This document shows positions 16,626 to 64,000 of a stretch of 64,000 nucleotides of DNA, piece by piece. Where the stretch lies: positions 1-64,000 of IMG/VR virus record IMGVR_UViG_3300008111_000002, one strand, 5' to 3'. Below the pieces are notes generated by a model. It ran no database searches and had not been told where the DNA came from. It was given only the letters and a program-made list of their open reading frames with translations. Within the stretch, counting starts at the first letter, position 1. Each line of letters opens with the position of its first letter. A program made the translations under genes and the position numbers.

Positions 16626-17346
16626 CGAAGGACTACGTCCTGGAGATCTACAAGATCTTATCGAACCAACATTTTATGTAGATAAATTTCGATCTAAAAT
16701 GGGAGAAGATCGCGATGTCTGTGTGGTTAGCTTTTTAGTTAAAGATAGACTACCTGCCAGAGACATGATGGAATTTATTGAAAAAGGATATCAGTTTGTT
16801 TTAGACGCCGATGTTAGTAGTGGAGAAGACAACAATGGCGGATACACTGTGTTTGTAGAATTAGAAAGACAGGCCGATCTTCATAAAAATATTAAAGAAA
16901 TTATAGAAGGATTAAAACGTCTAACAAAAATTAATGAATGGAGTTTTAGATATCATAAAAACTTCGAAACTCACGAACTAGGCGAAAATTTAGAAAAAGT
17001 TATTCCTAATAATGCCAACGAATATGACGGATTAATGACTAGGATTAAAACAGAGAGTATTAAAAAGTTTTTTAATAAAACTTTAATGGATGATCTAAAG
17101 TTAAACAGTGACATTATAACTATCTACAAACCTTTTAATCAAAAATTACAGTTTAAATTAGTTGCTCAAGATAGTATTGAAAACATTCTTGAGGGAGCGA
17201 CTTCACAAATACAAGTAGACGACAAAAGCATGAGTGAGGTATTTTGGCTTACTAAAGTTATTGGAGACTACGGTATCACAAAAATAGGTAATCAGTTCTT
17301 ACTAACAAATAAGAACGAATCATTAATGGTGGAGAGACTAATATGA
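16603..17346 (+). CDS. Hypothetical protein
   Basis: Probable start is ATG 16603 (MLKQQQLNEG...); couples to the endolysin gene by an ATGA overlap. Confidence 0.65.
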   Translation: MLKQQQLNEGLRPGDLQDLIEPTFYVDKFRSKMGEDRDVCVVSFLVKDRLPARDMMEFIEKGYQFVLDADVSSGEDNNGGYTVFVELERQADLHKNIKEIIEGLKRLTKINEWSFRYHKNFETHELGENLEKVIPNNANEYDGLMTRIKTESIKKFFNKTLMDDLKLNSDIITIYKPFNQKLQFKLVAQDSIENILEGATSQIQVDDKSMSEVFWLTKVIGDYGITKIGNQFLLTNKNESLMVERLI

Positions 17347-17972
17347 GTTTTACATTTGAATTTACAAAAGCACAACTAGGACAAATTATTCCTAAAAATC
17401 CGTACTTAAATAATTGGTACGAAGCACTACATGAAATTTTACCGGAATATGAAATTAACACTCCCAAACGTGTAGCGGCGTTTATTGCACAATGCGCACA
17501 CGAGTCTGGAAATTTCTTATTCCTAAAAGAAAATTTAAACTACAAAGCAGAAAGCCTAGTAAAGGTATTTCCAAAATACTTTCCTAGCATGGATATTGCA
17601 CAGCAATATGCTAAAAAACCAGAAAAAATTGCCAACAGAGTTTATGCAAGTCGTATGGGCAACGGTGACGAATCCAGCGGCGACGGTTGGAAGTTTTGTG
17701 GTCGTGGATTAATTCAATTAACTGGTAAAAATAATTACACATTTTTTGCTGCCAGTATTGGAGTGGATCTAAACGAAGCAGCAGAATATCTACAGACATT
17801 TGAAGGTGCTGTTCAGTCAGCATGTTTCTTTTGGGAAAATACAAAATTAAATAAAGAAGCAGATGAAGGTGATATCAAGACCATGACTAAAAAAATCAAT
17901 GGTGGATTTATTGGTCTAGACGATCGTATCAAACACTATGAACATGCCCTGCATGTATTTGGAGCTCACTAA
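17343..17972 (+). CDS. Glycoside hydrolase family 19 endolysin
   Basis: AAFIAQCAHESG, GDGWKFCGRGLIQLTGKNNY, INGGFIGLDDR motifs. Confidence 0.92.
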   Translation: MSFTFEFTKAQLGQIIPKNPYLNNWYEALHEILPEYEINTPKRVAAFIAQCAHESGNFLFLKENLNYKAESLVKVFPKYFPSMDIAQQYAKKPEKIANRVYASRMGNGDESSGDGWKFCGRGLIQLTGKNNYTFFAASIGVDLNEAAEYLQTFEGAVQSACFFWENTKLNKEADEGDIKTMTKKINGGFIGLDDRIKHYEHALHVFGAH

Positions 17973-20997: not shown

Positions 20998-21484
20998 ACT
21001 AGGAGCTCACGAAAGTCTCATAACTACCAGCTCAAATTGGGACTTTGACAAAGACGGTAATGCTGAAGAATTTGAAAAATCAATGATTGAATTTATGGTT
21101 GCTAATCACGGAATAGGACTAGCGGCTAATCAAATTGGTATTACTAAGCGAGTATTTGTAATTGGTAGCATTAACATTCCTGGATTTCCAGAACCATTTG
21201 CTGTGTTTAATCCTGTAATTACAGAATACAGCAAAGATCAAAATGTAGATAAAGAAGGTTGCTTAAGTTATCCTAATCTGTGGTTAACTGTTAAACGACC
21301 AGAATGGATTGTTACACAATATCAAGATTCTAAAGGAAACTATCATGAAGTAAAAATAGATGGTTATCTTGCTAGATGTTTTCAACACGAATACGATCAT
21401 CTTAATGGTGTGTGCTTTGTAGACAAAGTATCCCAGATGAAGTTACAATTAGCTATGAAGAAACTAAGGAAACAAAAACAATGA
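20987..21484 (+). CDS. def: Peptide deformylase
   Basis: GIGLAANQIG, EGCLS and QHEYDHLNG motifs are all present. Confidence 0.95.
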   Translation: MEFKLGAHESLITTSSNWDFDKDGNAEEFEKSMIEFMVANHGIGLAANQIGITKRVFVIGSINIPGFPEPFAVFNPVITEYSKDQNVDKEGCLSYPNLWLTVKRPEWIVTQYQDSKGNYHEVKIDGYLARCFQHEYDHLNGVCFVDKVSQMKLQLAMKKLRKQKQ

Positions 21485-23781
21485 TCCAACCTAGTGAATC
21501 ACTACAAGCAATCTTTGAAAGATCTATTAAGATTGCTAAAGATAATAGTCACGAGTATATTACCATTGAACATATACTGTACAGTATTATGCTTGATGAA
21601 CCATCCTATAAAGTTATTGAGAACTTTGGAGCAGATGCAGAGTTTATTAAAACAAACTTAGATGCATTTGTTAAAAACAATCTTGATGATTTAAAAAGCA
21701 CTATTGTTGATCGTCCAAAGAAAACTAATAGTGTAGAGCGTGTTTTAAATAGATGTTTTACACAGGTATTGTTTAGCGGACGTCAACATATTGAACCCAT
21801 CGATGTTCTTATAAGTATTTTAAGTGAAAAGAATTCTTTTGCATTTTACTTCTTAACTAAATCTGGCGTCGTTAAAGATAAATTTGTCAAGTATTTCCAC
21901 GAAAACTTTAACGAAGAAGAAAACGAAATTGAAACACAACTAACGAATCCTAATCAAGTGGAAAAAATAATCAATACATTCTGCACTAATCTTTCATTGC
22001 AGGCCAAACAAAAGAAAATTGATCCTGTAATTGGCAGAGATGAAGAATTAGAAAAAGTACAATTAGTACTGGCAAGACGTAATAAGTGCAATGTTCTCAT
22101 GGTAGGCGATCCCGGTGTAGGTAAGACTGCCATTGCAGAGGGACTGGCACGTAAGATTCACGAAAAGAAAGTTCCTAAGTTTATTCAAGACCATACTGTT
22201 TATACTCTTGATATCAGTGCATTGTTAGCTGGTAGTAAGTATAGAGGTGACTTTGAAGAGCGTGTTAAAGCAGTTCTTTCTGCACTTGAGAAGAAAGGTA
22301 AAATTATTCTGTTTATTGATGAAGCACACATGATGCAGGGCGCAGGTGCTGCTAATCAATCAAGCAATGATATGGCCAATATGCTTAAGCCTATTCTTAC
22401 CAAAGGTGTTATTAAACTAGTGGCGTCAACTACATGGGAAGAATATCGCAAACACTTTGAAAAAGATCGTGCATTGATGCGCAGATTTCAAAGAATTACT
22501 ATTGACGAACCTTCCGCTGAAGTATCCGTTAAAATTCTCAAAGGTGTTAAGAAGTATTATGAAAAACATCATAATGTTAAAATTACCGAAGGTGCTATTG
22601 AACAGGCAGTTAAGTTGTCAGTAAAGTATATGACTGATAAGAAACTGCCAGACAAAGCAATTGATATCCTAGACTGTGCCAGTGCTCGTTATAAATTAAA
22701 AGACGAAGACGACGGTGATGTTATCAACATTGTTGATGTAGAGCAGATTCTGTTTGAAGTCAGTAAGATGCTTAATATGCCATTAGAAAATATTGCACAG
22801 AAAGAAAGTAAAAATCTTAGCAATCTAGAAAAAAATCTCAAGACCGTAATTTTTGGTCAAGATACAGCCGTTGATAATTTGCTGGACAAAATTTTTGTTG
22901 CTCAAGCAGGAATGAAATCTCCTAATAAACCAATTGGTAGTTTCTTGTTCTTAGGACCAACTGGTTGTGGTAAAACTGAAACTGCTAAACAATTAGCAGA
23001 TAAAATGTCTATGCCGTTGATCCGTTTTGATATGAGTGAATATCAAGAAAAGCATTCAGTGGCTAAACTGATCGGTGCTCCTCCGGGTTACGTTGGATTT
23101 GAAGACAATGCTGGTCAATTAATTACCAAACTACAGGAAAATCCCAACAGTGTATTACTGTTAGATGAAATTGAAAAAGCTCATCCAGATGTCAGTAATG
23201 TGTTGTTACAGTTAATGGATAACGGTTTTGTAACTGGTTCCAATGGTAAAGTTGCAGATGCTCGAAATGTTATTTTAATTATGACCAGTAATTTAGGTGC
23301 AGCCGACAATGAGAAGAATACCATTGGTTTTGGAACACTAGAAAAAACTGGTGAAGACGATAAGGCTGTTAAGAAATTCTTTAAACCAGAATTCCGTAAT
23401 CGTTTAGATGCTGTAATCAAGTTCAGCAGTCTTAAACCAGAAGTTGTACACAGTATTGTTGAGAAGTTTATCAAAGATCTGTCAACACAAATCAAAGATA
23501 AAGGTATTGAGATCGTTGCCAACACTGATGCTATCAAATATCTAGCAGAAAAAGGTTATGACAGTAAAATGGGTGCAAGACCGTTGGCTAGAATTATCGA
23601 TAACGAAATTAAGAGTCCGCTAAGTCGTAAAATTCTGTTTGGCGAACTTCAAGCAGGTGGCAAAATTACAGTTACCGTTAATAATGGTAAGTTGGATTTT
23701 GATATTGTTGATTCAAAGAAAAAGCTTGCCAAGTCAGATGACATTATTGAATCAATTACATTTAACAATATTGTACCGTGA
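21481..23781 (+). CDS. clpA: ClpA/ClpB-family AAA+ unfoldase
   Basis: Clp N-domain, GDPGVGKT, LFIDEAH, second Walker A GPTGCGKT, FDMSEYQEKH, LIGAPPGYVG, GARPL. The short middle region suggests ClpA. Confidence 0.9.
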   Translation: MIQPSESLQAIFERSIKIAKDNSHEYITIEHILYSIMLDEPSYKVIENFGADAEFIKTNLDAFVKNNLDDLKSTIVDRPKKTNSVERVLNRCFTQVLFSGRQHIEPIDVLISILSEKNSFAFYFLTKSGVVKDKFVKYFHENFNEEENEIETQLTNPNQVEKIINTFCTNLSLQAKQKKIDPVIGRDEELEKVQLVLARRNKCNVLMVGDPGVGKTAIAEGLARKIHEKKVPKFIQDHTVYTLDISALLAGSKYRGDFEERVKAVLSALEKKGKIILFIDEAHMMQGAGAANQSSNDMANMLKPILTKGVIKLVASTTWEEYRKHFEKDRALMRRFQRITIDEPSAEVSVKILKGVKKYYEKHHNVKITEGAIEQAVKLSVKYMTDKKLPDKAIDILDCASARYKLKDEDDGDVINIVDVEQILFEVSKMLNMPLENIAQKESKNLSNLEKNLKTVIFGQDTAVDNLLDKIFVAQAGMKSPNKPIGSFLFLGPTGCGKTETAKQLADKMSMPLIRFDMSEYQEKHSVAKLIGAPPGYVGFEDNAGQLITKLQENPNSVLLLDEIEKAHPDVSNVLLQLMDNGFVTGSNGKVADARNVILIMTSNLGAADNEKNTIGFGTLEKTGEDDKAVKKFFKPEFRNRLDAVIKFSSLKPEVVHSIVEKFIKDLSTQIKDKGIEIVANTDAIKYLAEKGYDSKMGARPLARIIDNEIKSPLSRKILFGELQAGGKITVTVNNGKLDFDIVDSKKKLAKSDDIIESITFNNIVP

Positions 23782-24826: not shown

Positions 24827-24870
24827 CTTCAAACAGTAGATAAATATAGTATCATCTTACGGAAGATACT

Positions 24871-26490
24871 ATGAGAGACCTATTATCTAAATTAGACGCT
24901 ATTATTAGCGAAACACAATTAAATCCAAATGATCCCAAAGGCGATTATGAGGCTAAGAAAAAATCTTTACAGGATTTAGAAAATGATCCTGTGGCTGCAG
25001 AAGATCCAGAAATTGCCGCTGCAATTGATCAGCGTAAAACAGATCTAGAAAAAGAAGCTAAACAAAAAGGCGTTGTTGAAAATTTTGAAATTGGAGACGA
25101 GTTTGGTATTAGCTTTGCAGAAGATCTAGAAATTGGCACAACAATTACAGAGATCCTAGAAGACGGCATTGTCATTGATCTAGACGACGATGCAGTTTCA
25201 TTCCTAGAAAGTCAAGGAATTAAATTCTTTGAAGGTGAACTTGTAGAAGGTGTAGCTGGTCCTAAGAGCTGCTGGAAGGGCTACAGAAAAGTTGGTACTA
25301 AGCCAGGCACTGGTCGTAACGCAGGCAAACGTGTAAATGACTGCGAGAAAATTGGTGAAAATCTAGACGAATATTTCTTTTTTGATGATCCAAAGAAAAA
25401 AGATCGTGGGCCTAGAGATTCTGGGCATGACGAATTAGATCGACGTGCAAAATCCAAAGTAGACTTGGGCGGTAGAGATGCTAGAGATTATAAAGATGCT
25501 AAGAAAAAAGGACAGTATAAAATTTCTGGGCCTAAAGGTAAACTTCCAGAAGACCATGGTCCTGAAAATCCAGACGCAAGTTATAACGTAGGTGAGTACG
25601 ATCGCGAAGGCGATATGGCCAAAGACGATTTAAGAACTATCAATGATGCTGCTAAAGAATTATACAGCATTATCAAAGCAGACGAAAATCTACCAGAATG
25701 GGTACAGGCCAAAATTGTTAAAGCAATGGATTATTTAGACACTGCTCGCGACTACATGAAGGCTAACAAATATGCTGAAGATACAGAAGTAGACGAAGCT
25801 AGAAAACCAGCAATAAACTTTGATGGTGACGATATTCAAAAATTAATTACTATAGACGATCTGCCTACATTAAAAGCACAGGCATTTGATTTAATTTCTA
25901 AACCAAGCCAACGTCCAATGAAACCAGAAAAAGTAGAATGGTTTAAAAATGCCCTCGAAAGAATAATGGATAAGAAAGGGGTCATTAAATTAATGTATGA
26001 CCTAATGTTATCAGGTGAGGGGCATGGTGTAATTGGTACTAGATCGTCAATGGGGCAAAGTAATTACAGAAAGAGATTTGCCGATGACATAAACGAAGGT
26101 GATGTAAGCACAGGTAATCTTCAAAAGATGATGCAATACACTAATTTAATAGGAAACTATGTCGATGATCCAGAAGCCAAGAAATATGTAAATGAACTAA
26201 AATCTATGTTAAACTGGTATTTAGGTCAAGATAAAGAATCAAATGTTGATGAAGCTAAGTATCAAGGTCGTGAAGTGCCGTTAGGCAAGAAGATGGCTGG
26301 CGATGTTAAAAAATCAAAAGTATATGTACGTAAGCCAAATGGTAATATTGTCAAAGTAAACTTTGGCGATAAAAAGATGCGTATTAAAAAATCTAATCCT
26401 GCACGTAGAAAATCATTCCGTGCTAGACATAACTGCAAAAATCCAGGTCCACGTTGGAAAGCACGTTATTGGTCATGCAGGAGCTGGTAA
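24871..26490 (+). CDS. Modular late protein / putative head-internal polyprotein
   Basis: Late promoter at 24839-24846. Modules are separated by [ILV]xE sites (VVE, LVE, LDE, LPE, VDE, INE, VDE). The basic C-terminal module is KSFRARHNC...ARYWSC. Confidence 0.6.
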   Translation: MRDLLSKLDAIISETQLNPNDPKGDYEAKKKSLQDLENDPVAAEDPEIAAAIDQRKTDLEKEAKQKGVVENFEIGDEFGISFAEDLEIGTTITEILEDGIVIDLDDDAVSFLESQGIKFFEGELVEGVAGPKSCWKGYRKVGTKPGTGRNAGKRVNDCEKIGENLDEYFFFDDPKKKDRGPRDSGHDELDRRAKSKVDLGGRDARDYKDAKKKGQYKISGPKGKLPEDHGPENPDASYNVGEYDREGDMAKDDLRTINDAAKELYSIIKADENLPEWVQAKIVKAMDYLDTARDYMKANKYAEDTEVDEARKPAINFDGDDIQKLITIDDLPTLKAQAFDLISKPSQRPMKPEKVEWFKNALERIMDKKGVIKLMYDLMLSGEGHGVIGTRSSMGQSNYRKRFADDINEGDVSTGNLQKMMQYTNLIGNYVDDPEAKKYVNELKSMLNWYLGQDKESNVDEAKYQGREVPLGKKMAGDVKKSKVYVRKPNGNIVKVNFGDKKMRIKKSNPARRKSFRARHNCKNPGPRWKARYWSCRSW

Positions 26491-26843
26491 TGTTATTAAA
26501 CGAATTGTTTTCTAAATCAATAGAAGAACCTAAAAAATACGATCCAGAAGTAGATTATCTTGATGATTTAAAATTCTGGATCAGTAATAATGATGAAGCA
26601 TTATCAAAAATGATAATGCCGGCCATAACTCAACAAAAATCGCAACCAAACGAAGAATCTAACTACCAACTCTACATTAAACCGTTGGCAAAGTGCGCAG
26701 AAGATTATTGTGTGAAGTTTGATTTACTACATAGTAAAGACGAGATTTTTACTCCAGAAGCTATTGTAACTTTAGCAAAAAAAATTGCAGAAGAGCAAAG
26801 TAACTTTATTAAAAAAGGCGACTACAATAATGAGACTGTTTGA
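26490..26843 (+). CDS. Hypothetical late protein (MLLNELF start)
   Basis: TAATG coupling; N-terminus resembles neighbouring genes. Confidence 0.6.
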   Translation: MLLNELFSKSIEEPKKYDPEVDYLDDLKFWISNNDEALSKMIMPAITQQKSQPNEESNYQLYIKPLAKCAEDYCVKFDLLHSKDEIFTPEAIVTLAKKIAEEQSNFIKKGDYNNETV

Positions 26844-27468
26844 ATTCTTAGATAAAATGAACGAACAGGATGATGATAATTACCCACGTCCTGTTGATGA
26901 ATTAAAAAAACTTATCGCTATTACAGAACAACAAAAAGATGTTGTTGAAAGTCTTGCCCGAGAAGCACAAAAGATTACTACAGAAATCAAGTACGATCAA
27001 ACAGTACAAGACATTGTGAGTAGAATTAGACAATTAGCAGAAAAAATTACCTTTGAAGATAAAGGATACAAAAGCGAAATTGAGTCAGCAATCGATGATG
27101 CATTAAACGCAATGAATGAACTTGAGTCGGCTGTGTATCAAATTGACGAACCATTTAAAGATCTATTAAGAGCATTAGATAATGAAGTGCTTGAATTAGA
27201 ATATGAAATGGATGAACACAAATGGAAAAGAGAATCTGCTGATCCAAAATTAACAATGCCTAAACAAAGAGATCCTAATTGGAAAACTATGCAGGCCAAA
27301 GGTTCTAGTGGTGCTGCTGGCGCACATAGAGATAAAAAGAAAGAACAAAAACAGGGTTACGAAAAACATAGAGCGAAAAGCATGGCCGAAGGGCATGGAC
27401 GATACTGGTGTTCTACAGATAAGAAATGGAAAACACGCAAAGGCCCTAAACAAACTCGTAGTTCATGA
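26830..27468 (+). CDS. Hypothetical late protein (MRLFEFLD start; acidic coiled coil plus basic tail)
   Basis: Probable start is ATG 26830. Confidence 0.6.
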   Translation: MRLFEFLDKMNEQDDDNYPRPVDELKKLIAITEQQKDVVESLAREAQKITTEIKYDQTVQDIVSRIRQLAEKITFEDKGYKSEIESAIDDALNAMNELESAVYQIDEPFKDLLRALDNEVLELEYEMDEHKWKRESADPKLTMPKQRDPNWKTMQAKGSSGAAGAHRDKKKEQKQGYEKHRAKSMAEGHGRYWCSTDKKWKTRKGPKQTRSS

Positions 27469-27770
27469 AACAATATAGAATTACTTCAGAAAATTCCAAA
27501 AATTTAGATAGCACTGATGATTGCTATCTGGATCCTAGCGATCCTATACACGAAATAAAAAGAATGCAATACCTTGGCGGACTTGGTGCACAGGCAAGAC
27601 TACAAGAATATAAGATAGAGCAACAAGGTAGCAATATTTCTGTAACAGGGATGGAAAAACAACAGTTAGAAAAGAAACACAAGATTAAACCAGGAACACC
27701 GGAATGGTTTCAATTATGGTTTAGTCTACCTTACATGACTGGAGAAAAACCTGTAGGAGATAAAAAATGA
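27465..27770 (+). CDS. Hypothetical protein
   Basis: ATGA overlaps on both sides. Confidence 0.6.
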
Positions 27771-28093
27771 TTGAAGTATCTGAATCAGCTAAAGCAAAAG
27801 TTATTGATCTATTAAATGAAGAAAATAATCCCGATCTTATGTTGAGAACATTTGTTCAAGGTGGCGGATGCAGTGGTTTTCAATACGGTTTTACATTTGA
27901 CGAAATTAAATCAGACGACGATTTTGAAATAAATTTAGATACAAAATGGAAATTAGTTATAGATTCTATGAGTATGCAATATCTCACTGGTGCAATAATT
28001 GACTATACAGAAGATTTAAATGGCAGTCAGTTTACAATTAAAAATCCCAATGCACAAACAACCTGCGGCTGTGGATCTAGTTTTTCAGTTTAA
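27767..28093 (+). CDS. erpA: A-type Fe-S cluster carrier (IscA/ErpA/HesB family)
   Basis: GGGCSGFQY and [14 protein letters not shown] motifs. Confidence 0.92.
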
Positions 28094-28095
28094 TT

Positions 28096-28254
28096 ATGGA
28101 CAAAACTCTCAAAGACTACATTGATAGAACTAACAAGCGTTTAGCGGAGGAACGTAAAGTTCCCTCAACACCCAACCCTAATCAATATCCCGTTCAACCA
28201 GAACAAAAAAATCCAGATTCTGACGAAAAAATTAATCCATACGGACAACATTAA
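28096..28254 (+). CDS. Small hypothetical protein (52 aa)
   Basis: MDKTLKDYIDRTNKRLAEERKV...; TAATG-coupled to the next gene. Confidence 0.5.
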   Translation: MDKTLKDYIDRTNKRLAEERKVPSTPNPNQYPVQPEQKNPDSDEKINPYGQH

Positions 28255-29582
28255 TGAGAGCCAAAGAATTCATTACTGAAAACTTTGCTGACGGTAAAGT
28301 CAAAGGCAAAAGTCGCCCAGGCCGTGTAAAACGTGCAGGTGCCAGTTGTTCTGGTTCAGTAACTGATCTTCGCAAACGTGCTAAAAATGCATCTGGCGAA
28401 CGAGCCAAAATGTATCACTGGTGCGCCAACATGAAAAGCGGACGTAATGAATCCGTTGAAGAAGGTTGGAAAGAAGCCGAAGACATCAAATTATCATTTG
28501 AAGAAGGATACTTCGCTATAGAAAATACTCCAGAAGGAATATTGGTCTACGGAGAAGATGTTAGGTTCACTGATGATAAAGCATGGGTGGATTTTGTTTA
28601 TAATTTGTCTAAGGATGAAATTGTAAATTATAAAGTAAGTCACGGGTACAATGGTAGTTACGACTATGATTTTGACTACATAAAAACAACCATTGACGAG
28701 ATCGCAGATGAAATTAAACGAAGTTATGGAACTACGTGGGACGAAATCAGCGACGAGTTACATGGCGGATTAAGTGTAGATGAAGGTTGGAAAGATTGGG
28801 TAGCAGGAGCTGCATTAGGAGCTGCTGCATTAACTTCGCAGGCTAAACCAATTATTGTTCAGCAGCACGTAGAACCAGGCGATACGGTCTATTCTATAGC
28901 TAGACAAAATAATGTTGATCCTAAAGAAATTATGAAATTAAATAATTTCAATAAAGATACAAAATTAAAAAAAGGTCAAATGGTTAAGGTACCTGACTAT
29001 TCTAAACCAGTAGATACTAAACCAGAAGTTAAAAAAATAACAAAACCAGAAAAAATAGATAAAAAATTAGATATTTCAAATACTGTCACCGGCACCAAAC
29101 ATGAAGCAATATTAAGACACTATGCTAATAAAGCTAATATCAAAGGAAACGAATTAGTTGCATTTTTAGCACAAGTAGCACACGAGACCATGGATTTTAA
29201 ACACATGGCAGAGATTGGTGGCAGTTTAGATTTTAAAAAGTATGATATTAGATTTGCTCCAGGCAAGGCAAAGCAATTAGGTAATACTGAACCAGGTGAT
29301 GGCGCTAAGTTTAAAGGTAGGGGATACATTCAACTAACTGGCAGATACAATTATGCCAAAGCAGGAGAAGCATTAGGTCTACCACTAGAGAAAAAACCAG
29401 AGCTAGTTGAGAAGCCAGAAATAGCTGCCAAGGTAGCAATATGGTATTGGAAGAACAGAGTTAAACCTAATGTAGATGATTTTAAAGATGTTAAGGGTGT
29501 AACCAAACCAATCAATCCAGGGTTAAAAGGATTAGAAGATAGGAAAGAAAAATATCAAGCGTATAAGGTAGCCGTCAAATGA
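28254..29582 (+). CDS. Modular LysM + GH19 peptidoglycan hydrolase, probably virion-associated
   Basis: LysM (HVEPGDTVYSIARQNNVDPKEIMKLNNF...LKKGQMVKVP) and GH19 (AFLAQVAHET, GDGAKFKGRGYIQLTGRYNY, INPGLKGLEDR). N-terminus is MRAKEFITE. Confidence 0.85.
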   Translation: MRAKEFITENFADGKVKGKSRPGRVKRAGASCSGSVTDLRKRAKNASGERAKMYHWCANMKSGRNESVEEGWKEAEDIKLSFEEGYFAIENTPEGILVYGEDVRFTDDKAWVDFVYNLSKDEIVNYKVSHGYNGSYDYDFDYIKTTIDEIADEIKRSYGTTWDEISDELHGGLSVDEGWKDWVAGAALGAAALTSQAKPIIVQQHVEPGDTVYSIARQNNVDPKEIMKLNNFNKDTKLKKGQMVKVPDYSKPVDTKPEVKKITKPEKIDKKLDISNTVTGTKHEAILRHYANKANIKGNELVAFLAQVAHETMDFKHMAEIGGSLDFKKYDIRFAPGKAKQLGNTEPGDGAKFKGRGYIQLTGRYNYAKAGEALGLPLEKKPELVEKPEIAAKVAIWYWKNRVKPNVDDFKDVKGVTKPINPGLKGLEDRKEKYQAYKVAVK

Positions 29583-30226
29583 GAGCTCGAGAAATATTAC
29601 CAGAAAAGTGGAGTACAAAATATAAACGCTCTATAAATTGTTCTAATCCTAAAGGATTTAGTCAAAAGGCGCACTGTGCTGGCCGTAAGAAAAATGAAAG
29701 CAGCAGCGAAGAAGAAGTTTATAGCAAAGAAAATAACTGGGGATTATCTTCAGAAGATGCCGAGCATTTGCTTCATCAACTAGATGATCCTGAATACAAT
29801 ATAACTAGAGAGTTCGATGATTATCCCGGATTTGAATATATGTATGAATATTACACTCAGCATTTTTCCGGAGGACAATATTTTTACGATATTCTCAAAG
29901 ATGCATTAGAAGATATTAAAGACGGATATCTTGAAATAGACAAAGATGTTGACGAGGGTTGGAAAAGCAAAATGGCCGGTGCTGCGTTAGCTGCTGCCAA
30001 TTTATTAGGAAGTCCTGCCCAGGCTACAGAAGAACCAGTCAAACCTATCACTATTGCCTACGTGATGATTGACGGTGAAATGAGAAAATATAATCTTGGT
30101 GATAGATTTTCTGATGCTAGAGAAGCAGAAAAATTTATCAGCGGAGTCTTGGACAAGCAAGGTTTACAAGGATATCAATTAGAAATTAAACATGGATATC
30201 CTAAAAAGAAAGATGGTGAAAAATGA
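29579..30226 (+). CDS. Modular late protein (basic N-module, acidic middle, EGWK-AGAAL module)
   Basis: MRAREILPE start; CSNPKGFSQKAHCAGRKK; shares EGWK..AGAAL with the previous gene. Confidence 0.6.
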   Translation: MRAREILPEKWSTKYKRSINCSNPKGFSQKAHCAGRKKNESSSEEEVYSKENNWGLSSEDAEHLLHQLDDPEYNITREFDDYPGFEYMYEYYTQHFSGGQYFYDILKDALEDIKDGYLEIDKDVDEGWKSKMAGAALAAANLLGSPAQATEEPVKPITIAYVMIDGEMRKYNLGDRFSDAREAEKFISGVLDKQGLQGYQLEIKHGYPKKKDGEK

Positions 30227-31011
30227 GAGCCAAAGAGTTTGTTACGGAAAGAATGAAAACTACATGGGTTCGACCGTGGATATCTTCTGCTGTGACAAAA
30301 ATTGGTAATTATAAAAATGATTTAGAATGGTACAATAAGTTTTTTAAAAATTTAAATGCCAGCCAAGAACTTAAACAATGGGCTGAACAGGCTCTAAATC
30401 GTCCGTTAACAATCAAGCCAAAGTTATTAGATCAACCTAATAATCCATTGGCTGCTATAGAAGCAGATCACGAAATTAGCGGCGATCCAATTAAGCATAC
30501 AATTACCATAGAAGTTAATGTAGCACATGCGCCTACAGATGAAAAAACTGCTGTTAATTTCATAGACAGACTTAGTTCTTTATTAATACACGAATTAAAT
30601 CATGCTAGCCAGCGTAGTGGACAAATTAAAAAATCCAAAGACGATGACAGTGTTTATGATATTGAAACAGATGTTTGGAAAAAGACTCCTCCAAAAGCAT
30701 TAACTAAACGAGACGAGTATTATCTGTATATGTTAAACAATATGGAGCGAGATGCTTGGATCAGTCAAATTGCCAACGATATATACAACAAACTTGGAAA
30801 AGATAGTTTAGGCAATTTAAACAACATACTAAAACAGTCACAGCGTGAAGATTATGCAGTAATTGGTAGCAAAATAGTACAAGTTCCAAATTTAAAAGCG
30901 TTATGGGATGCTATTAACTATTATGGTAGATTTTTAAAATACAGCAAAGAAGATACGTGGAATAAGGTTAAAAAAGAACTATATAGCTATCTATCCAAAT
31001 ACGGTAAATAA
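30223..31011 (+). CDS. Late protein with HExxH (zincin-like) motif
   Basis: MRAKEFVTE start; LIHELNHAS, with a downstream MERDAW. Confidence 0.55.
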   Translation: MRAKEFVTERMKTTWVRPWISSAVTKIGNYKNDLEWYNKFFKNLNASQELKQWAEQALNRPLTIKPKLLDQPNNPLAAIEADHEISGDPIKHTITIEVNVAHAPTDEKTAVNFIDRLSSLLIHELNHASQRSGQIKKSKDDDSVYDIETDVWKKTPPKALTKRDEYYLYMLNNMERDAWISQIANDIYNKLGKDSLGNLNNILKQSQREDYAVIGSKIVQVPNLKALWDAINYYGRFLKYSKEDTWNKVKKELYSYLSKYGK

Positions 31012-31017
31012 TATATT

Positions 31018-31281
31018 ATGAAAATTAAAGAGATACTCGAGTCTGCTACGGCTGGTGCAACTTCCGCAGGAAGTATTGCTACTGTACCAAACCCGCATAT
31101 TAGCCCTGGTAAAGCTAGGGGTAAAAAAAGTTATTTGGGTAATCCCTGGGGCGGAATCAGTGGTACTAAAGCACCCCCTCAACCCAAAGTAAAACAGTTA
31201 AAAAATAAAGACGGAACAGCCAAAAATGCACTAGATCAAAGCACTAGTTTATTTGGTGAAGGCAATTACGTCAAAAGATAA
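31018..31281 (+). CDS. Small late protein (MKIKEILE start)
   Basis: Preceded by GGTAAATA (31003-31010). Confidence 0.6.
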   Translation: MKIKEILESATAGATSAGSIATVPNPHISPGKARGKKSYLGNPWGGISGTKAPPQPKVKQLKNKDGTAKNALDQSTSLFGEGNYVKR

Positions 31282-31319
31282 ATACACTATACGCCTTTAA
31301 ACGAACAACGGAGATTTAA

Positions 31320-32456
31320 ATGGATTTTTACAAAATTTTACAAAAGTTCAACGACATTGACCCTGTAAAAACAGAGAGCAAGTCTGTTGCAACTGAACCA
31401 ACAGTAGCTAAAAAAGTTGCATTAGCAGAAGATGCTCAACTAAGAGTATTAGCTGGTGTTAGCACAATCCTTGAAGAAGGACGCAGAATTAGCGATAGAC
31501 AAGATGTTGCCGAAGCTAAGAAAAAGAATGAATACGCAATTGGTATGGCTGCTGCTAAAAAAGAAGCAGGAATGGGTGATAAACCAGCAACTGGTTTACC
31601 TAAGAAAGTAGTTAAAAAAGGTCACGAAATTGCCAAAGCAATCAAGCGTGACGAAAGCGTTGAAGTTGAAGGCGAGCAACTAGACGAAATGTTTAATGAT
31701 GAAGATCCAGTAGGCACTAAGAAAAAAACATCTTCTGGTACTGCTACCAAGACTGACAAAGGTCTTAAGCACGAAAGAAAGTATGGTAAAGATACCGATG
31801 AAGAAGAAGAAGATGACGATAAACCAGCTAAAAAGAAAACTAAAGAATCTTTCCGTTCTAAATTTGAAGCAATGGTAGAAGCCAAAAAAGACGATGCTGA
31901 TATGAAAGTTGGTGATAAGAAAAAATCATCGACTGGTGGCACTATTGAAAAAACCAAGACTGGTGTTAAGCACACAGCTGGTAAAAACTACAGTGGTAAG
32001 GCTGCAGAAAAAGAAGTCAAGGAAGGTGCTAAGCCAGACGCTAACAAAGACGGCATTCCGGATTACGCACAAGACGGAAAAGGTCCTAAGGACCTAGGAA
32101 AAGGTAAAACACCTGCTGCCAAAGACGGCGGTGACAAGAAAGATGGCAAGAAAGGTATGTCGGCCAAACAAGAGAAATACTTTGGCAAAAAGAATGAGTC
32201 TACACAAGTTACTAAAAAAGTAGTTGCTGAAAGTGTACAACAAAAATACACATTCAAGCAGTGCTTACAATTAGTTAAAGAAAGTGGCGGCCAACAACAA
32301 ATTGATCCAGTTGACACAGCATTGTGGAAATGGGCTCAAAGAGTTGCTGTATCTAAAGTGCAAGAAGGTGCAGCACGTGAAGCGATGGCAGCATTTGTAT
32401 ATGAAAGAATGGGCGGTGAGTTTACACTCTACGACGTTCTATCAGAAACAAAATAA
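31320..32456 (+). CDS. Highly charged late protein, possible prohead core/scaffold
   Basis: Lys/Glu-rich and low complexity, with several xxE sites (LAE, LEE, VAE, LDE, MVE). Late promoter at 31277-31284. Confidence 0.5.
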   Translation: MDFYKILQKFNDIDPVKTESKSVATEPTVAKKVALAEDAQLRVLAGVSTILEEGRRISDRQDVAEAKKKNEYAIGMAAAKKEAGMGDKPATGLPKKVVKKGHEIAKAIKRDESVEVEGEQLDEMFNDEDPVGTKKKTSSGTATKTDKGLKHERKYGKDTDEEEEDDDKPAKKKTKESFRSKFEAMVEAKKDDADMKVGDKKKSSTGGTIEKTKTGVKHTAGKNYSGKAAEKEVKEGAKPDANKDGIPDYAQDGKGPKDLGKGKTPAAKDGGDKKDGKKGMSAKQEKYFGKKNESTQVTKKVVAESVQQKYTFKQCLQLVKESGGQQQIDPVDTALWKWAQRVAVSKVQEGAAREAMAAFVYERMGGEFTLYDVLSETK

Positions 32457-32472: not shown

Positions 32473-32504
32473 AAAAAGCCAGTCCTGAGTTGACTGGCTT
32501 TTTT
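32473..32504 (+). terminator. Intrinsic terminator overlapping a -35 box
   Basis: AAAAAGCCAGTC-ctgagtt-GACTGGCTTTTT(T), a 12-bp inverted repeat. Confidence 0.8.
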
Positions 32505-32518
32505 ATTGACTATATAAT
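32490..32518 (+). promoter_or_regulatory. Sigma70-type promoter TTGACT-N17-TATAAT
   Basis: Consensus-like hexamers upstream of an AAGGAG RBS and the ORF at 32541. Confidence 0.8.
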
Positions 32519-32540: not shown

Positions 32541-32807
32541 ATGGCAAAAATGTATGGTCCTGAAGAACGGGCTAAACTAGAACGTCTCATTAACGAAGGT
32601 TCAAATGTTCTACGCGAAGTAGAAGATCTTCAAGAAGGCTTAAAAGAAACTGTCAAAGCAGTTGCAGAAGAACTACAAGTCAAGCCAAGCATTATTAACA
32701 AAGCAATCAAAATAGCACATAAAGACAATTGGAAATCTCATGAAGAAGAATGGGATGAAATTGAAATGATTCTCGGTGTTACTAAAAACTTACCCGAGAA
32801 AGACTAA
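32541..32807 (+). CDS. Small dsDNA-binding protein (T4 DsbA/GapR-like)
   Basis: Helical pattern LREVEDLQEGLKETVKAVAEELQVKPSIINKAIKIAHK; recognised by eye only. Confidence 0.55.
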   Translation: MAKMYGPEERAKLERLINEGSNVLREVEDLQEGLKETVKAVAEELQVKPSIINKAIKIAHKDNWKSHEEEWDEIEMILGVTKNLPEKD

Positions 32808-51438: not shown

Positions 51439-51736
51439 AAAATTTTTTCGACCGCCAGAAAAAGTTGTTAATGAATGGCCGGAAATTTTTGAGGACATGT
51501 ATATGAGCACCATGCCTCTCTATTATACAAAATCTATGCAGATTAAATTTGATAATGGGAGGATATGGCAGCTCAATATACAAGAGTTAGTAGTTGAACA
51601 TGGTAGTGATGAATTATCTACTAAACTATTAGAAACATTTAAAGAATATCAACAAGACATCACCGGTGTAGATTTTGAAATTGATATCGATAAATTAAAA
51701 AAAGATATTAAAAAATCAATTAAGAAAATTCTTTAA
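51431..51736 (+). CDS. Hypothetical protein
   Basis: Last plus-strand gene; convergent overlap with the island gene. Confidence 0.6.
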   Translation: MPKKFFRPPEKVVNEWPEIFEDMYMSTMPLYYTKSMQIKFDNGRIWQLNIQELVVEHGSDELSTKLLETFKEYQQDITGVDFEIDIDKLKKDIKKSIKKIL

Positions 51737-52925
51737 AATACTTTTTAGTACTAGATACAATTTCATCAAGGTATTGTTTTCTAAAGTCTAATTGTTTATA
51801 AATGTATAAATTATGTTCAACGATTGACAACCATTTGTTATAATATTTTTCTTTATCATCATTTATCCAAGATAAAAAAGATTCGTGAAATTTAGCGAAT
51901 CTTTTTTTATGATCCGCAATATCGTCATAACTTGTATCTATGAAATCAGTTCTAAATCCATAATTTTGTAATTTTTTTAATATTCCAACTTGTCCAAGTA
52001 TAATAAATGGATGTCCCATAGCAATTGGGCGAAATGTTTTTTCTGTTATAAACATTCCCGGATCCTCAAAAAAAGTTTCTGTTGAAACGGTTAAGAATGT
52101 ATTTTCAAAAATACATAAATTACTTTTTCCAGCAAGATGTGCTGTTCTTAATTCTTCTGTCGAAACATCAGCTTCTATTGGATATTGTGTTTTTAAAGTT
52201 TTACTATAAGTTTCCGATGATTCATCTAAAAATGTAGGATTTAATGATTCTAAATTAGTATCAAAAAAAGATCCACCAGAAACGATTCCTCGAGATAGTA
52301 AATTATTTTTTGCTAAAAAATATAAATGATCTGTTCTATGACTTCTGTGCGCCCTGTTTAAGCTATTAAAAAGTTTAGCACGATTCTTTATTGATTTATA
52401 AAAAATAGGATCATATTGTTTTTTCCAAGCCTCTCCAACCCATTCTATACCTTCAATAAATTCTAAAGTTGGTTTTAGATTATTTTGCCGACACCACTTA
52501 TTGTATTGTTCTTTTGCTTTTAAATTTCCAGATACGATTAGTACACTCTTAGAAGGTAATTCTAATTTATCAAAAGATTCTGTCAGGTATCTATAACAAT
52601 CATATTTTGATGTAAAACTATCTCCTTCAACTACAGAAATTATTACGATTCTTAATTTTTTTTGTTTTGTAGCCTCTATCACATGAATCGGAATATTATC
52701 TAAAATTTTAAAACTATCTTGATGTTCGTCTGTACACCAATCATAAGAATGTCTACTAACTTCAATAAAATATATTCCGGGATAATCATAATTTTTACTA
52801 CAAACAAATTCTAATTCAGGATGTGTATTTCTTTTAACAAAATATTCATAAGGTCTGACATTTTTTACCTGATCTATATGAGAAAGATTTATTTCATTCT
52901 GATTATCAAAATAACACTGTATCAT
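51720..52925 (-). CDS. GT10/fucosyltransferase-like GT-B protein, paralog 1
   Basis: FNSLNRAHRSHR, TETFF..FITEKTFRPIAMGHPFIILG, GFRTDFIDTSYD. Confidence 0.55.
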   Translation of the reverse strand: MIQCYFDNQNEINLSHIDQVKNVRPYEYFVKRNTHPELEFVCSKNYDYPGIYFIEVSRHSYDWCTDEHQDSFKILDNIPIHVIEATKQKKLRIVIISVVEGDSFTSKYDCYRYLTESFDKLELPSKSVLIVSGNLKAKEQYNKWCRQNNLKPTLEFIEGIEWVGEAWKKQYDPIFYKSIKNRAKLFNSLNRAHRSHRTDHLYFLAKNNLLSRGIVSGGSFFDTNLESLNPTFLDESSETYSKTLKTQYPIEADVSTEELRTAHLAGKSNLCIFENTFLTVSTETFFEDPGMFITEKTFRPIAMGHPFIILGQVGILKKLQNYGFRTDFIDTSYDDIADHKKRFAKFHESFLSWINDDKEKYYNKWLSIVEHNLYIYKQLDFRKQYLDEIVSSTKKYFKEFS

Positions 52926-53514
52926 ATCCCCTCGCTAGTATCACACCATTATTTTGAGAATAAACAATTCTGTAATTACGACTGACCAGGAACGGCACAA
53001 CAGCAGAGCATTTTCCTATATAAATTCCGCTATGTTCTTGCAACGGTGTATCATCGCAAATAATAATAGACTTATCAGACATATAAGGATAACAATTTAT
53101 CATTTGATTTAAATGTTCTGCTACACAATTAAGATTAGTCCATTCTAAATTAAATTTTTCTCGATATAAATTTTTTAATCCAGTTTCATCTGGTTTCATT
53201 GGACGATGATTCCAATCATAATTATCTAGATATAAAATTTTTATTTTTTTGTTAAGAGTTGGTAAAACTTCCTTGGTCCATTTTGATCCGTCGCTGACCA
53301 CAAAGGTAGTATTTGTTAAATGAGATAAATTATTTCTAGCAGATTCTGATATATCAACACTATAAAAAGGAACGTTAAATTTCTTCGAATGCAAATTAAA
53401 AAATTCAGTAGAACCTTCTCCCCTCTCGCTACCGATTTCTAATATAATGTCTTTATGCTGATCGTATTCAGCATATAGAATGAAGGGAATCGAGTTTTTA
53501 TGAAAGTTTGCCAT
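52906..53514 (-). CDS. Class I SAM-dependent methyltransferase
   Basis: ILEIGSERGEGST, YSVD, ILYLDN, IICDDT. Confidence 0.7.
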   Translation of the reverse strand: MANFHKNSIPFILYAEYDQHKDIILEIGSERGEGSTEFFNLHSKKFNVPFYSVDISESARNNLSHLTNTTFVVSDGSKWTKEVLPTLNKKIKILYLDNYDWNHRPMKPDETGLKNLYREKFNLEWTNLNCVAEHLNQMINCYPYMSDKSIIICDDTPLQEHSGIYIGKCSAVVPFLVSRNYRIVYSQNNGVILARGYDTVLF

Positions 53515-55727: not shown

Positions 55728-55734
55728 AAAAGTT

Positions 55735-58530: not shown

Positions 58531-58540
58531 TTTAAGTCCT

Positions 58541-63999: not shown

Positions 64000-64000
64000 C

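What the first reader, a model, noticed from the sequence alone, without database searches (positions are those of the whole stretch)
24871..32456. Cluster of late proteins sharing a T4 capsid-targeting-like N-terminal tag
Seen: consecutive unrelated ORFs begin MRAKEFITE (28254), MRAREILPE (29579), MRAKEFVTE (30223), MKIKEILE (31018), MRLFEFLD (26830), MLLNELF (26490) and MRDLLSKLDAIISE (24871), near several TAAATA boxes. Established: T4 internal proteins carry a 10-aa capsid targeting sequence (MKTYQEFIAE) removed by gp21 at [IL]xE, and IPI is an injected anti-restriction protein. Inference: a locus of packaged, protease-matured, injected cargo proteins, i.e. a portable addressing tag attached to varied payloads.
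Basis: partly seen in the sequence, partly recalled or inferred. Interest (0 to 1): 0.72.

Follow-up and report, generated by a model that had tools for sequence, protein, structure and literature searches.

The report
Capsid-targeting tags on jumbo-phage late proteins
A late-gene cluster of an uncultured freshwater jumbo phage encodes unrelated proteins that all start with the same roughly 9-residue leader (MRAKEF[IV]xE), and this leader closely resembles the protease-removed capsid-targeting leader of phage T4 internal proteins, so it probably marks proteins packed into the head; this is a known principle seen in a new phage lineage.

Summary
The strict motif M[RK]x(2-3)[ED][FYIL][ILVF]xE opens 6 of 237 ORFs in the 209.8-kb genome, against 0.035 expected.

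The window comes from an uncultured lake jumbo phage with T4-type head genes: portal, S77 prohead protease, MCP and a gp55-like late sigma factor. The cluster is one late unit, running from an ATAAATA box at 24840 to a terminator at 32474-32505.

The tag is selected at the protein level. It is found in at least 119 IMG/VR loci on about a dozen unrelated payloads.

Within payload families, M-R-A-K-E-F-I and Glu9 are near-invariant, while position 8 varies freely. This is the T4 gp21 I/L-x-E cleavage signature.

The MCP keeps L-S-E|SATAG at the position of the T4 gp23 cleavage site. ORF 31018 reads ILE|SATAGATSAG. Two of the strictly tagged proteins have no [LI]xE outside the tag, as in T4 IPI-III. 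The scaffold-position protein has the highest [LI]xE density in the genome.

The best reading is a T4-type capsid-targeting propeptide on varied cargo (confidence about 0.65). Cargo includes a LysM-GH19 lysin and a zincin-like HExxH protein. Packaging, cleavage and injection remain untested. I classify it as a new member of a known kind.

The parts
24840..24846 (+). ATAAATA box (context GATAAATAT), a T4-type late promoter 25 nt upstream of ORF 24871
   Evidence: The motif is depleted genome-wide, and 26 of 32 copies sit just upstream of gene starts, including the head operon. A gp55-like sigma factor is present.
24871..26490 (+). 539-aa protein with N-terminus MRDLLSKLDAIISE|T (loose tag ending I-S-E). 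It has internal and C-terminal basic Cys modules (CWKGY..., RRKSFRARHNC...) that are common in aquatic phages.
   Evidence: The G003 homologue starts M..RSLIEKLTAISE. Homologues in L063 and L067 start MHIIDLLRE and MSFKKYLTE.
26490..26843 (+). 117-aa acidic protein with N-terminus MLLNELFSKSIEE (Alt-like tag variant)
   Evidence: The same N-terminus, MLLNELFSQLDE, occurs on an ORF in the syntenic G003 locus that gave no BLAST match to it. Compare T4 Alt, MELITELFDE.
26830..27468 (+). 212-aa protein with N-terminus MRLFEFLD (weak tag, Asp instead of Glu at the last position)
   Evidence: No homologues were examined, so tag status is uncertain.
27465..27770 (+). 101-aa protein with N-terminus MKQYRITSE (doubtful tag)
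   Evidence: The L007 homologue keeps MKQYKITSD, but other homologues lack it.
27767..28093 (+). IscA/HesB-type Fe-S cluster protein, untagged, inside the late unit
   Evidence: (PF01521, 61.9 bits).
28096..28254 (+). 52-aa ORF, untagged
28254..29582 (+). 442-aa modular protein. Order of parts: tag MRAKEFITE|N, a basic Cys module, an acidic domain, an Ala/Gly-rich signal-like segment (aa 178-200), a LysM domain and a GH19 lysozyme-like domain.
   Evidence: LysM 44 bits, Glyco_hydro_19 50.8 bits; endolysin PHROGs. The modules occur separately behind tags in other loci. A second, untagged GH19 is at 17343-17972.
29579..30226 (+). 215-aa protein. Order of parts: tag MRAREILPE|K, a basic Cys module (KYKRSINCSNPKGFSQKAHCAG), an acidic domain, a signal-like segment ending AQA, and a 65-aa C-terminal domain.
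   Evidence: Its only [LI]xE site is the one in the tag.
30223..31011 (+). 262-aa protein with tag MRAKEFVTE|R followed by a compact alpha/beta domain. HExxH (H123 E124 H127) and E175 are invariant, suggesting a zincin-like metallopeptidase.
   Evidence: 31-sequence alignment: E9 and R10 invariant, positions 3, 4 and 8 free. (pLDDT 89, residues 1-7 below 50). (weak IrrE/SprT/M48-like fold hits).
31018..31281 (+). 87-aa basic protein starting MKIKEILE|SATAGATSAGSIATV. The tag is followed by a copy of the mature N-terminus of the major capsid protein.
   Evidence: pairwise E = 1e-6 to MCP residues 37-56, KYLSE|SATAGATSAGNVATL; that site aligns with the T4 gp23 cleavage site. In L042 and L033 the same module is preceded by IRE| inside larger tagged proteins.
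31278..31284 (+). Second ATAAATA late box, 36 nt upstream of ORF 31320
31320..32456 (+). 378-aa Lys/Glu-rich low-complexity protein (pI 9.1). It has no tag but is late-promoter driven, and could be an internal or DNA-associated protein.
32474..32505 (+). Hairpin AAAAAGCCAGTC-ctgagtt-GACTGGCTTTTTT, an intrinsic terminator that closes the late unit. A sigma-70-like promoter (TTGACT-17-TATAAT, 32490-32518) follows.

Best explanation
The cluster is a late transcription unit of a T4-superfamily jumbo phage. Several of its otherwise unrelated products carry a short N-terminal propeptide, with consensus M-[RK]-x-x-[ED]-[FIL]-[ILV]-x-E and commonest form MRAKEF[IV]xE. [quoted passage not shown] In that model the leader brings the protein into the scaffolding core of the assembling prohead. 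The phage's gp21-type (Peptidase_S77) prohead protease then removes it by cutting after the final Glu (I/L/V-x-E|). The mature cargo stays in the head with the DNA and is delivered into the next host. Cargo here includes a LysM-GH19 lysin, a zincin-like HExxH protein, small basic proteins and Cys-rich basic modules. The following are shown: the tag, its enrichment and protein-level conservation, its portability, the protease gene, the late promoter, and the cleavage-site logic. The following are inferred: binding to the core, cleavage, retention in the head, and ejection.
For: 1. T4-type head machinery. The genome encodes a portal, an MCP and a Peptidase_S77 protease that keeps the DHP and GVSSRG catalytic blocks. 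It also has a gp55-like late sigma and a DsbA-like protein.
2. Late expression. ATAAATA boxes head the cluster, the head operon, and the tagged genes 105411 and 153997.
3. Enrichment. Six of 237 ORF starts carry the strict motif, versus 0.035 expected.
4. Protein-level selection. All synonymous codons are used inside the tag, upstream DNA is not conserved, and similarity stops sharply after Glu9.
5. Portability. At least 119 IMG/VR loci start an ORF with MRAKEF[IV]TE, on about 12 unrelated payload families. All 5 contigs over 190 kb that were tested also encode S77.
6. Cleavage signature. In 117 homologues of the 114-aa family, M R A K E F I and E9 are near-invariant, while position 8 is V/T/I/F/E. 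The 262-aa family shows the same pattern.
7. Likeness to real T4 leaders, read from NC_000866: IPII/IPIII MKTYQEFIAE, IPI MKTFKEF..., Alt MELITELFDE, gp24 MAKINELLRE. These compare with MRAKEFITE and with MKTFKEYLAE at G000 153997.
8. MCP cleavage site. The T4 gp23 site FLTE|AEIGG aligns with YLSE|SATAG in this MCP. ORF 31018 reads ILE|SATAGATSAG. In L042 and L033 the same module is preceded by IRE|.
9. Distribution of sites. The scaffold-position protein has the highest [LI]xE density in the genome (4.96 per 100 aa, versus 1.09 overall), like T4 gp22 (5.95). T4 IPI-III have a single [LI]xE, at their CTS cut. The 29579 and 184335 proteins likewise have only the one in the tag. The payload families are depleted in such sites.
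10. Structure. The tag is disordered in a confident AF2 model (residues 1-7 pLDDT below 50, overall 89).
11. Locus behaviour. The locus between the ClpA-like gene and DsbA/PolB is a variable late region that holds tagged ORFs in a complete 338-kb relative. The 125-aa tagged family occurs as 2-4 diverged tandem copies per locus. Both features recall the variable T4 IP loci.
Against: There is no direct evidence of packaging, cleavage or ejection. No cultured relative carries these payloads, and no RNA or proteome data were available. The protease-substrate co-fold gave no verdict. Gene 184335, which carries the best-conserved tag, lacks a canonical ATAAATA box and has only CTAAATA 4 nt upstream. 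T4 gp61.1, in an early-gene region, also starts MKTFKEFIKE, so a tag alone does not prove packaging. Untagged genes (IscA-like, 28096, 31320) share the unit. Several first-reader tags (26830, 27465) fit poorly. The depletion statistics rest on related sequences that are not independent.
Confidence: 0.65

Rival explanations
1. The leader is a prohead-protease substrate, but the proteins are assembly-only core or scaffold accessories, like T4 gp67 and gp68. They would be degraded or expelled during maturation rather than kept as cargo for injection.
For: The tag-like ORF 112810 sits at the gp67 position, between portal and protease, behind a late box. ORF 31018 mimics the MCP cleavage site.
Against: The strongly tagged proteins have almost no internal [LI]xE sites, unlike the scaffold-position protein and T4 gp22, gp67 and gp68. 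Payloads are folded enzymes, namely a GH19 lysin and an HExxH protein, which have no obvious assembly role.
Confidence: 0.1
2. The leader is a recognition signal for a different machine. Candidates are the phage's ClpA-like unfoldase encoded next door (21412-23781), regulated degradation, or a step before export. The Sec/Tat-like segments in some tagged proteins prompt the export idea.
For: A ClpA-type AAA+ gene lies 1 kb upstream and is conserved in G003. The 28254 and 29579 proteins have internal AGAAL...AQA segments. L118 and a G003 ORF have SRRGFL Tat-like motifs after or inside tagged proteins.
Against: The ClpA-like gene lies upstream of the late box that starts the cluster. It lies up to about 230 kb from some tagged genes in G003. 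The tag itself is charged and has no hydrophobic core. Only 2 of 140 tagged proteins have a real TM-grade segment. None of this accounts for the I/L-x-E logic shared with the MCP site.
Confidence: 0.1
3. The shared start is a nucleic-acid-level or recombination feature. It could be a translation-initiation-favourable 5' coding region, or a short homology patch that lets gene cassettes be swapped, with no role for the peptide itself.
For: Many starts overlap the upstream stop (ATGA), which forces an A-starting second codon. Modules are clearly shuffled between loci.
Against: All synonymous codons are used at Ala3, Ile7, Thr8 and Glu9, Arg2 uses both AGA and CGA, and flanking DNA is unconserved. 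So the conservation is at the amino-acid level. Nine residues (27 nt) with variable third positions make a poor recombination substrate.
Confidence: 0.05
4. The resemblance is largely chance or compositional: Lys/Glu-rich N-termini in an AT-rich phage.
For: The weak variants (26830 MRLFEFLD, 27465 MKQYRITSE) fit only a loose pattern.
Against: The enrichment is about 170-fold over the internal frequency. At least 119 exact-pattern loci were found in IMG/VR for a pattern of about 40 bits, all at ORF starts. The tag is near-invariant across families that are only 24-60% identical.
Confidence: 0.02

Closest known systems
Phage T4 capsid targeting sequence (CTS) on internal proteins IPI, IPII and IPIII, and the short propeptides of Alt and gp24 (Mullaney & Black 1996; reviewed in PMC3012670 and PMC5694885)
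   Same: Both are 9-14-residue N-terminal leaders shared by unrelated proteins. Both have the core E-[FL]-[ILF]-x-E and end in the gp21 consensus I/L-x-E. Both genomes have a gp21-type protease, a gp23-type MCP and TATAAATA-type late promoters. In both, the cargo has no other [LI]xE site, the cargo is small and basic, and the loci are variable. One tag here (MKTFKEYLAE) shares its first six residues with T4 IPI and its last two (A-E) with IPII/III.
   Different: The commonest form is one residue shorter (MRAKEFIxE) and starts M-R-A-K. There are roughly 8-14 tagged genes per genome. Payloads include multi-domain enzymes: a LysM-GH19 lysin, an HExxH zincin-like protein, and ligase-like and esterase-like proteins in relatives. 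The host phage is an uncultured lake jumbo phage of about 340 kb, whose PolB is only 43-50% identical to those of the closest cultured phages (Atu_ph07, Phosso, 121Q-like E. coli jumbo phages). Function is untested.
Long propeptides of phiKZ/SPN3US-type giant-phage ejection proteins (PMC5694885, PMC7411985)
   Same: In both, head-internal proteins are processed by a prohead protease after Glu. Paralogues share conserved N-termini. A mature fragment can begin with a hydrophobic segment (SPN3US gp47), which recalls the VDE|GWK..AGAAL segments here.
   Different: Those propeptides are usually longer than 100 residues, with an A/S-x-E motif and a different head gene set. Here the leaders are T4-like in length and motif.
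Ejection proteins of T7 (gp14, gp15, gp16) and P22 (gp7, gp16, gp20)
   Same: There is a precedent for a head-packaged peptidoglycan hydrolase, the lytic transglycosylase domain of T7 gp16 (own knowledge). It is a possible analogue of the tagged LysM-GH19 protein.
   Different: Those systems have no shared cleavable N-terminal tag, belong to podoviruses, and are assembled as an ordered core stack.
Sec/Tat signal peptides
   Same: Both are short N-terminal addressing sequences removed by a protease.
   Different: The tag is charged, has no hydrophobic h-region, and ends in x-E rather than A-x-A. Signal-like segments do occur in some payloads, but downstream of the tag.

Membership tests
T4-type CTS / internal-protein system | A short (about 10-20 aa) N-terminal leader shared by otherwise unrelated proteins of one phage | tested here: met
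   Six strict and several loose tags occur on payloads with no mutual BLAST similarity.
T4-type CTS / internal-protein system | The leader ends in the prohead-protease consensus (L/I)-x-Glu, with a variable middle residue | tested here: met
   Ile7 (or a hydrophobic residue) and Glu9 are invariant and position 8 is free. The MCP keeps L-S-E at the site homologous to the T4 gp23 cut.
T4-type CTS / internal-protein system | The genome encodes a gp21-family (Peptidase_S77) prohead protease with catalytic His and Ser | tested here: met
   82.6 bits, cut-off 27; 32% identity to T4 gp21, with EVDHP and GVSSRG conserved. Five of 5 large tagged contigs also have it.
T4-type CTS / internal-protein system | Sequence likeness to the T4 CTS itself | tested here: met
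   One search gives the T4 leaders from NC_000866. Searches give MRAKEFITE and MKTFKEYLAE. All share the core E-F/Y-I/L-x-E.
T4-type CTS / internal-protein system | Expression together with the head genes (late promoter) | tested here: inconclusive
   ATAAATA boxes head the cluster, 105411 and 153997, and a gp55-like sigma exists. However, 184335 has only CTAAATA, and no transcript data exist.
T4-type CTS / internal-protein system | The leader is necessary and sufficient for incorporation into the prohead core | not testable with these tools
   This needs genetics or biochemistry. The co-fold attempt gave no verdict.
T4-type CTS / internal-protein system | The leader is removed in mature virions, and the mature protein is ejected with the DNA | not testable with these tools
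   No virion proteome is available for this uncultured phage or for any relative carrying these payloads.
GH19 / LysM peptidoglycan hydrolase (payload of 28254) | Matches to the Glyco_hydro_19 and LysM profiles above the curated cut-offs | tested here: met
   50.8 bits versus 25.5; 44.2 bits versus 20.9; endolysin PHROG, 1.4e-43. Catalytic residues were not inspected.
Zincin metallopeptidase (payload of 30223) | An HExxH motif with a third downstream ligand, and a zincin fold | tested here: inconclusive
   HExxH and E175 are invariant in 31 homologues. The fold search gave only weak IrrE/SprT/M48-like hits (TM 0.2-0.3) and two unnamed clusters (TM about 0.6). There was no PDB hit and no Pfam hit.
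phiKZ-type long-propeptide ejection proteins | A propeptide longer than 100 residues cut at A/S-x-E, in a phiKZ-like head gene set | tested here: not met
   The leaders are 8-14 residues, and the head genes are T4-like. Definitions are taken from PMC5694885.

The most novel reading that the evidence does not exclude
The tag is a sequence-readable label for the whole packaged proteome of an abundant, uncultured clade of lake jumbo phages. Some cargo would be two-stage addressed. The prohead protease would cut not only after the leader but also at internal x-E sites just before Sec/Tat-like segments (VDE|GWK..AGAAL..AQA; ..SRRGFLRGAGAAAAL..SQA). After injection, the host's own export machinery would then carry a lysin or other domain from the cytoplasm to the periplasm of the newly infected cell. 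The diverged tandem 125-aa tagged family would be an arms-race set of injected anti-defence proteins analogous to T4 IPI*.
Probability: 0.1. Interest if true: 0.85.

Novelty: new member of a known kind. Interest (0 to 1): 0.55.

Why it matters
If the leader works as in T4, injected proteins can be read directly from metagenomic sequence in a widespread uncultured phage lineage. Such proteins are the first phage products to meet host defences, and in T4 they include the anti-restriction protein IPI*. Here the leader gives a ready candidate list: at least a dozen payload families, including a lysin, a zincin-like protein and a hypervariable 125-aa family. It also shows that the T4 CTS and gp21 cleavage logic is conserved across a very deep branch of the T4 superfamily. 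Finally, it offers natural variants of a tag already used to load foreign proteins into T4 capsids. The principle itself is not new.

Tried and rejected
- **Cultured-phage matches.** Megablast of the cluster against 50,697 phage records found nothing. tblastn of the 262-aa and 114-aa tagged proteins also found nothing. No proteome from a cultured relative could therefore be used.
- **Literature.** No paper contains 'MRAKEF'.
- **Protease-substrate co-fold.** The S77 protease plus the 262-aa tagged protein scored 0.00, with no verdict. This is evidence neither for nor against binding.
- **PDB fold search.** The 262-aa model gave nothing significant.
- **ESM Atlas.** The search with the 215-aa protein gave no usable hit. 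The C-terminal module of 24871 matched only viral unknowns and DUF5872/DUF5824-like clusters.
- **AF2 model of the 114-aa family.** Confidence was mediocre (pLDDT 75, pTM 0.43) and the model was not searched further.
- **Sequencing runs.** Many lake DNA metagenomes hold the phage, but no RNA run does.
- **Cultured relatives Atu_ph07 and Phosso.** They have a few tag-like starts (MRLSEILEE, MRLSEIINE). The one Atu_ph07 ORF examined is not a member of the 125-aa family and sits among small unknown genes, so it was uninformative.
- **ClpA-like neighbour as the tag reader.** Rejected as the main idea. The gene lies upstream of the late box that starts the cluster, and it is not linked to most tagged genes in G003.
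- **mRNA-level explanation.** Rejected because of synonymous variation within the tag.
- **Transmembrane or secretory reading of the tag.** Rejected on hydropathy.

Full report
**What the window is.** The 64-kb window is the first part of a 209,836-bp IMG/VR virus record. The record is linear and estimated about 60% complete. Its family-B DNA polymerase is 43-50% identical to those of the cultured jumbo phages Phosso, Atu_ph07 and the 121Q-like E. coli phages. Near-identical DNA occurs in many lake and freshwater metagenomes from 2017 to 2024.

The genome has a T4-type head module. It contains a portal (phrog_213), a Peptidase_S77 prohead protease at 114568-115203, and a gp23-type major capsid protein at 116321-117490. 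The protease scores 82.6 bits and is 32% identical to T4 gp21, with the DHP and GVSSRG blocks conserved. The MCP is 36% identical to T4 gp23 over its core. The genome also encodes a gp55-like late sigma factor and a DsbA-like protein at 32541-32807.

**The observation.** The payloads are not detectably related to each other. A strict form of the motif, M[RK]x2-3[ED][FYIL][ILVF]xE, opens 6 of 237 ORFs. Its frequency at internal positions predicts 0.035 such starts. Three of the six are the consecutive genes 28254, 29579 and 30223. The others are 105411 (MKVKDLIVE), 153997 (MKTFKEYLAE) and 184335 (MRAKEFIFE).

ORF 31018 (MKIKEILE) is one residue shorter. The starts at 24871, 26490 and 26830 are looser variants. 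The first two are nonetheless conserved at ORF starts in a complete 338-kb relative, G003, as M..RSLIEKLTAISE and MLLNELFSQLDE. Not every gene in the cluster is tagged. ORF 27767-28093 is an IscA/HesB-type Fe-S protein, and 28096 and 31320 have no tag.

**Transcription context.** ATAAATA is strongly avoided in the genome, with 32 copies against about 132 expected. Twenty-six of the 32 lie 5-49 nt upstream of a gene start on the same strand. These include the box before the head operon (112799), the box before the gene ahead of the portal (108348), and boxes before several very large genes. This is the core of the T4 late promoter TATAAATA (own knowledge), and it fits the gp55-like sigma.

Boxes sit at 24840 (25 nt before 24871) and at 31278 (36 nt before 31320). 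A hairpin with a T-run at 32474-32505 closes the unit, and a sigma-70-like promoter follows. The cluster is therefore one late unit with an internal second late start. Tagged genes 105411 and 153997 have their own boxes. Gene 184335 has only CTAAATA, 4 nt upstream.

**Selection acts on the peptide.** The pattern has 17 fixed and 6 two-fold positions. All 120 matches begin an ORF. Among 97 distinct nucleotide contexts, all four Ala and Thr codons, three Ile codons, both Glu and Phe codons, and both AGA and CGA are used. The upstream 30 nt are not conserved, and similarity ends abruptly after codon 9. This excludes a promoter, RBS or recombination cassette as the conserved object.

**Portability.** The exact tag sits on about 12 unrelated payload families of 65 to 384 aa. 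By far the commonest is a 113-135-aa family. An HMM finds 170 members in 119 loci, usually as 2-4 diverged tandem copies, and 152 of them are tagged. Median mature pI is 8.1.

Modules are shuffled behind the tag. The basic Cys module of 28254 is a stand-alone 65-aa tagged protein in L034 and L007. In L007 the GH19 lysin domain follows a tag directly. In L110 and L101 the lysin domain is fused to other N-terminal domains. The module that follows the tag in 29579 heads proteins of 136 to 318 aa elsewhere.

All five tagged contigs over 190 kb that were tested encode an S77 protease. The 90-150-kb contigs tested are 17-43% fragments. G003 has about 8-14 tag-like starts. Many lie in the same variable late locus, between the ClpA-like gene and DsbA/PolB, that holds the cluster here.

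**Cleavage logic.**
- In 117 homologues of the 114-aa protein (56-91% identical overall), M1, R2, A3, K4, E5, F6, I7 and E9 are invariant or nearly so. Position 8 is V, T, I, F or E.
- In the 262-aa family (41-90% identical), E9 and R10 are invariant, positions 6-7 stay hydrophobic, and positions 3, 4 and 8 vary freely.
- An invariant hydrophobic P3, a free P2 and an invariant Glu at P1 form the T4 gp21 consensus (L/I)-x-E (PMC5694885).
- The T4 gp23 cut FLTE|AEIGG aligns with YLSE|SATAGATSAGNVATL in this MCP.
- ORF 31018 reads MKIKEILE|SATAGATSAGSIATV (pairwise E = 1e-6).
- In two larger tagged proteins (L042, L033), the only [LIV]xE sites are the N-terminal tag and an internal IRE| placed exactly before the same SATAGATSA module.
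- The protein at the scaffold position (115218-116309) has the highest [LI]xE density in the genome, 4.96 per 100 aa against 1.09 overall. T4 gp22 has 5.95.
- T4 IPI, IPII and IPIII each have a single [LI]xE, at their known CTS cut. The 29579 and 184335 proteins likewise have only the one in the tag, and 30223 has only V-T-E9 plus the buried I-H-E of its HExxH motif.
- The payload families are depleted in such sites relative to shuffles: 2 versus 54 and 37 versus 83. These sequences are related, so the numbers are not independent.
- In a confident AF2 model of the 262-aa protein (pLDDT 89), residues 1-7 are below 50, so the leader is not part of the fold.

**Comparison with T4.** I read these leaders from the T4 record itself: IPII/IPIII MKTYQEFIAE, IPI MKTFKEFTST...ITE, Alt MELITELFDE and gp24 MAKINELLRE. 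The tags here share the core E-[FYL]-[ILF]-x-E. MKTFKEYLAE (153997) matches IPI in its first six residues and IPII/III in its last two.

The T4 literature describes internal proteins as a diverse set of proteins that share only a conserved CTS, which places them in the scaffolding core (PMC3012670). What is new is its presence, in a slightly different form and on many new payloads, in an uncultured jumbo-phage lineage. phiKZ/SPN3US-type giant phages instead use propeptides longer than 100 residues.

**Payloads in the window.**
- **28254:** tag, basic Cys module, acidic domain, weakly hydrophobic Ala/Gly segment, LysM, then GH19. An untagged GH19 at 17343-17972 is likely the ordinary endolysin. 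The tagged lysin is therefore an extra copy, consistent with a virion-borne role.
- **30223:** a compact domain with invariant HExxH and E175, with only weak zincin-like fold matches.
- **29579, 24871 and others:** these carry small basic Cys-containing modules that are widespread in aquatic phages but of unknown function.

**Cautions.** Nothing here shows packaging, cleavage or ejection. The co-fold of protease and substrate gave no verdict. No RNA data exist. No cultured phage carries these payloads. T4 gp61.1, in the primase region, starts MKTFKEFIKE, so a tag-like start does not by itself prove packaging.

**Verdict.** I put 0.65 on the CTS-like mechanism. The remaining weight goes to an assembly-only role, another reader of the tag, or a non-peptide explanation. 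I classify the finding as a new member of a known kind, with moderate interest.

Noticed in passing
window 31018-31281 and G000 116321-117490 (L121:12321-13490): The 87-aa ORF copies the maturation site and mature N-terminus of the major capsid protein (ILE|SATAGATSAGSIATV versus LSE|SATAGATSAGNVATL). In other phages the same module sits inside larger tagged proteins behind IRE|. What an MCP-N-arm mimic does in the head is unexplained.
   Followed up: partly
window 28254-29582 (aa 174-200) and 29579-30226 (aa 123-150); L118; G003 297068-297964: Some tagged proteins contain signal-peptide-like segments downstream of the tag: VDEGWK..AGAALGAAALTSQA, ..AGAALAAANLLGSPAQA, an internal Tat-like SRRGFLRGAGAAAALGATAMGSQA, and MRISEIIVE-APTDVSRRGFLKG. 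Their hydropathy is only moderate (KD15 about 1.2). The purpose of an internal export-like signal is unexplained.
   Followed up: partly
window 21412-23781: A phage-encoded ClpA-type double-AAA+ unfoldase (Clp_N, AAA, AAA_2 and ClpB_D2-small domains, with no middle domain). It is conserved in the 338-kb relative at 48% identity. No ClpP partner was looked for.
   Followed up: partly
window 27767-28093: An IscA/HesB-type Fe-S cluster assembly protein (PF01521) encoded in the middle of the late, tag-rich unit.
   Followed up: no
G000 112799, 145614, 151549, 153985, 163427, 77254; window 24445: Many ATAAATA late boxes end only 4-7 nt before the ATG. If transcription starts a few bases downstream as in T4, these late mRNAs would be leaderless or nearly so.
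   Followed up: no
window 51720-64000, minus strand: A low-GC island (28% versus about 36%) with reversed strand and skew. It encodes a UDP-glucose/GDP-mannose dehydrogenase, an NAD-dependent epimerase/dehydratase, a 2OG-Fe(II) oxygenase and a radical-SAM-like protein. It looks like a sugar-nucleotide or glycan modification cassette.
   Followed up: partly
window 24871-26490 (aa 150-185 and 455-539), 28254 (aa 10-65), 29579 (aa 10-40): Small Lys/Arg-rich Cys-containing modules (CWKGYxKxG...C; SINCSNPKGFSQKAHC; RRKSFRARHNCxNP...YWSC) recur in pelagiphages, roseophages, cyanophages and even a Nitrosopumilaceae spindle-shaped virus. They resemble DUF5872 and DUF5824, and their function is unknown.
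   Followed up: partly
T4 NC_000866 18966-19130 (L146:967-1131, minus): T4 gp61.1, a 54-aa hypothetical protein next to the primase gene, begins MKTFKEFIKE. This is a CTS-like leader on a gene not known to me as a head protein.
   Followed up: no
G003 243942-245081 and L118 (919-aa ORF): In relatives, a tag-like leader (MFINQILTE, MKPSDFLTE) precedes a nucleotidyltransferase or ligase-like domain (KxDG motif, ELKWDGMPV). In L118 this is fused to further domains. It could be a packaged RNA or DNA repair enzyme.
   Followed up: no
window 17343-17972: A second, untagged GH19-like protein (32% identical to the lysin domain of 28254), probably the canonical endolysin.
   Followed up: partly
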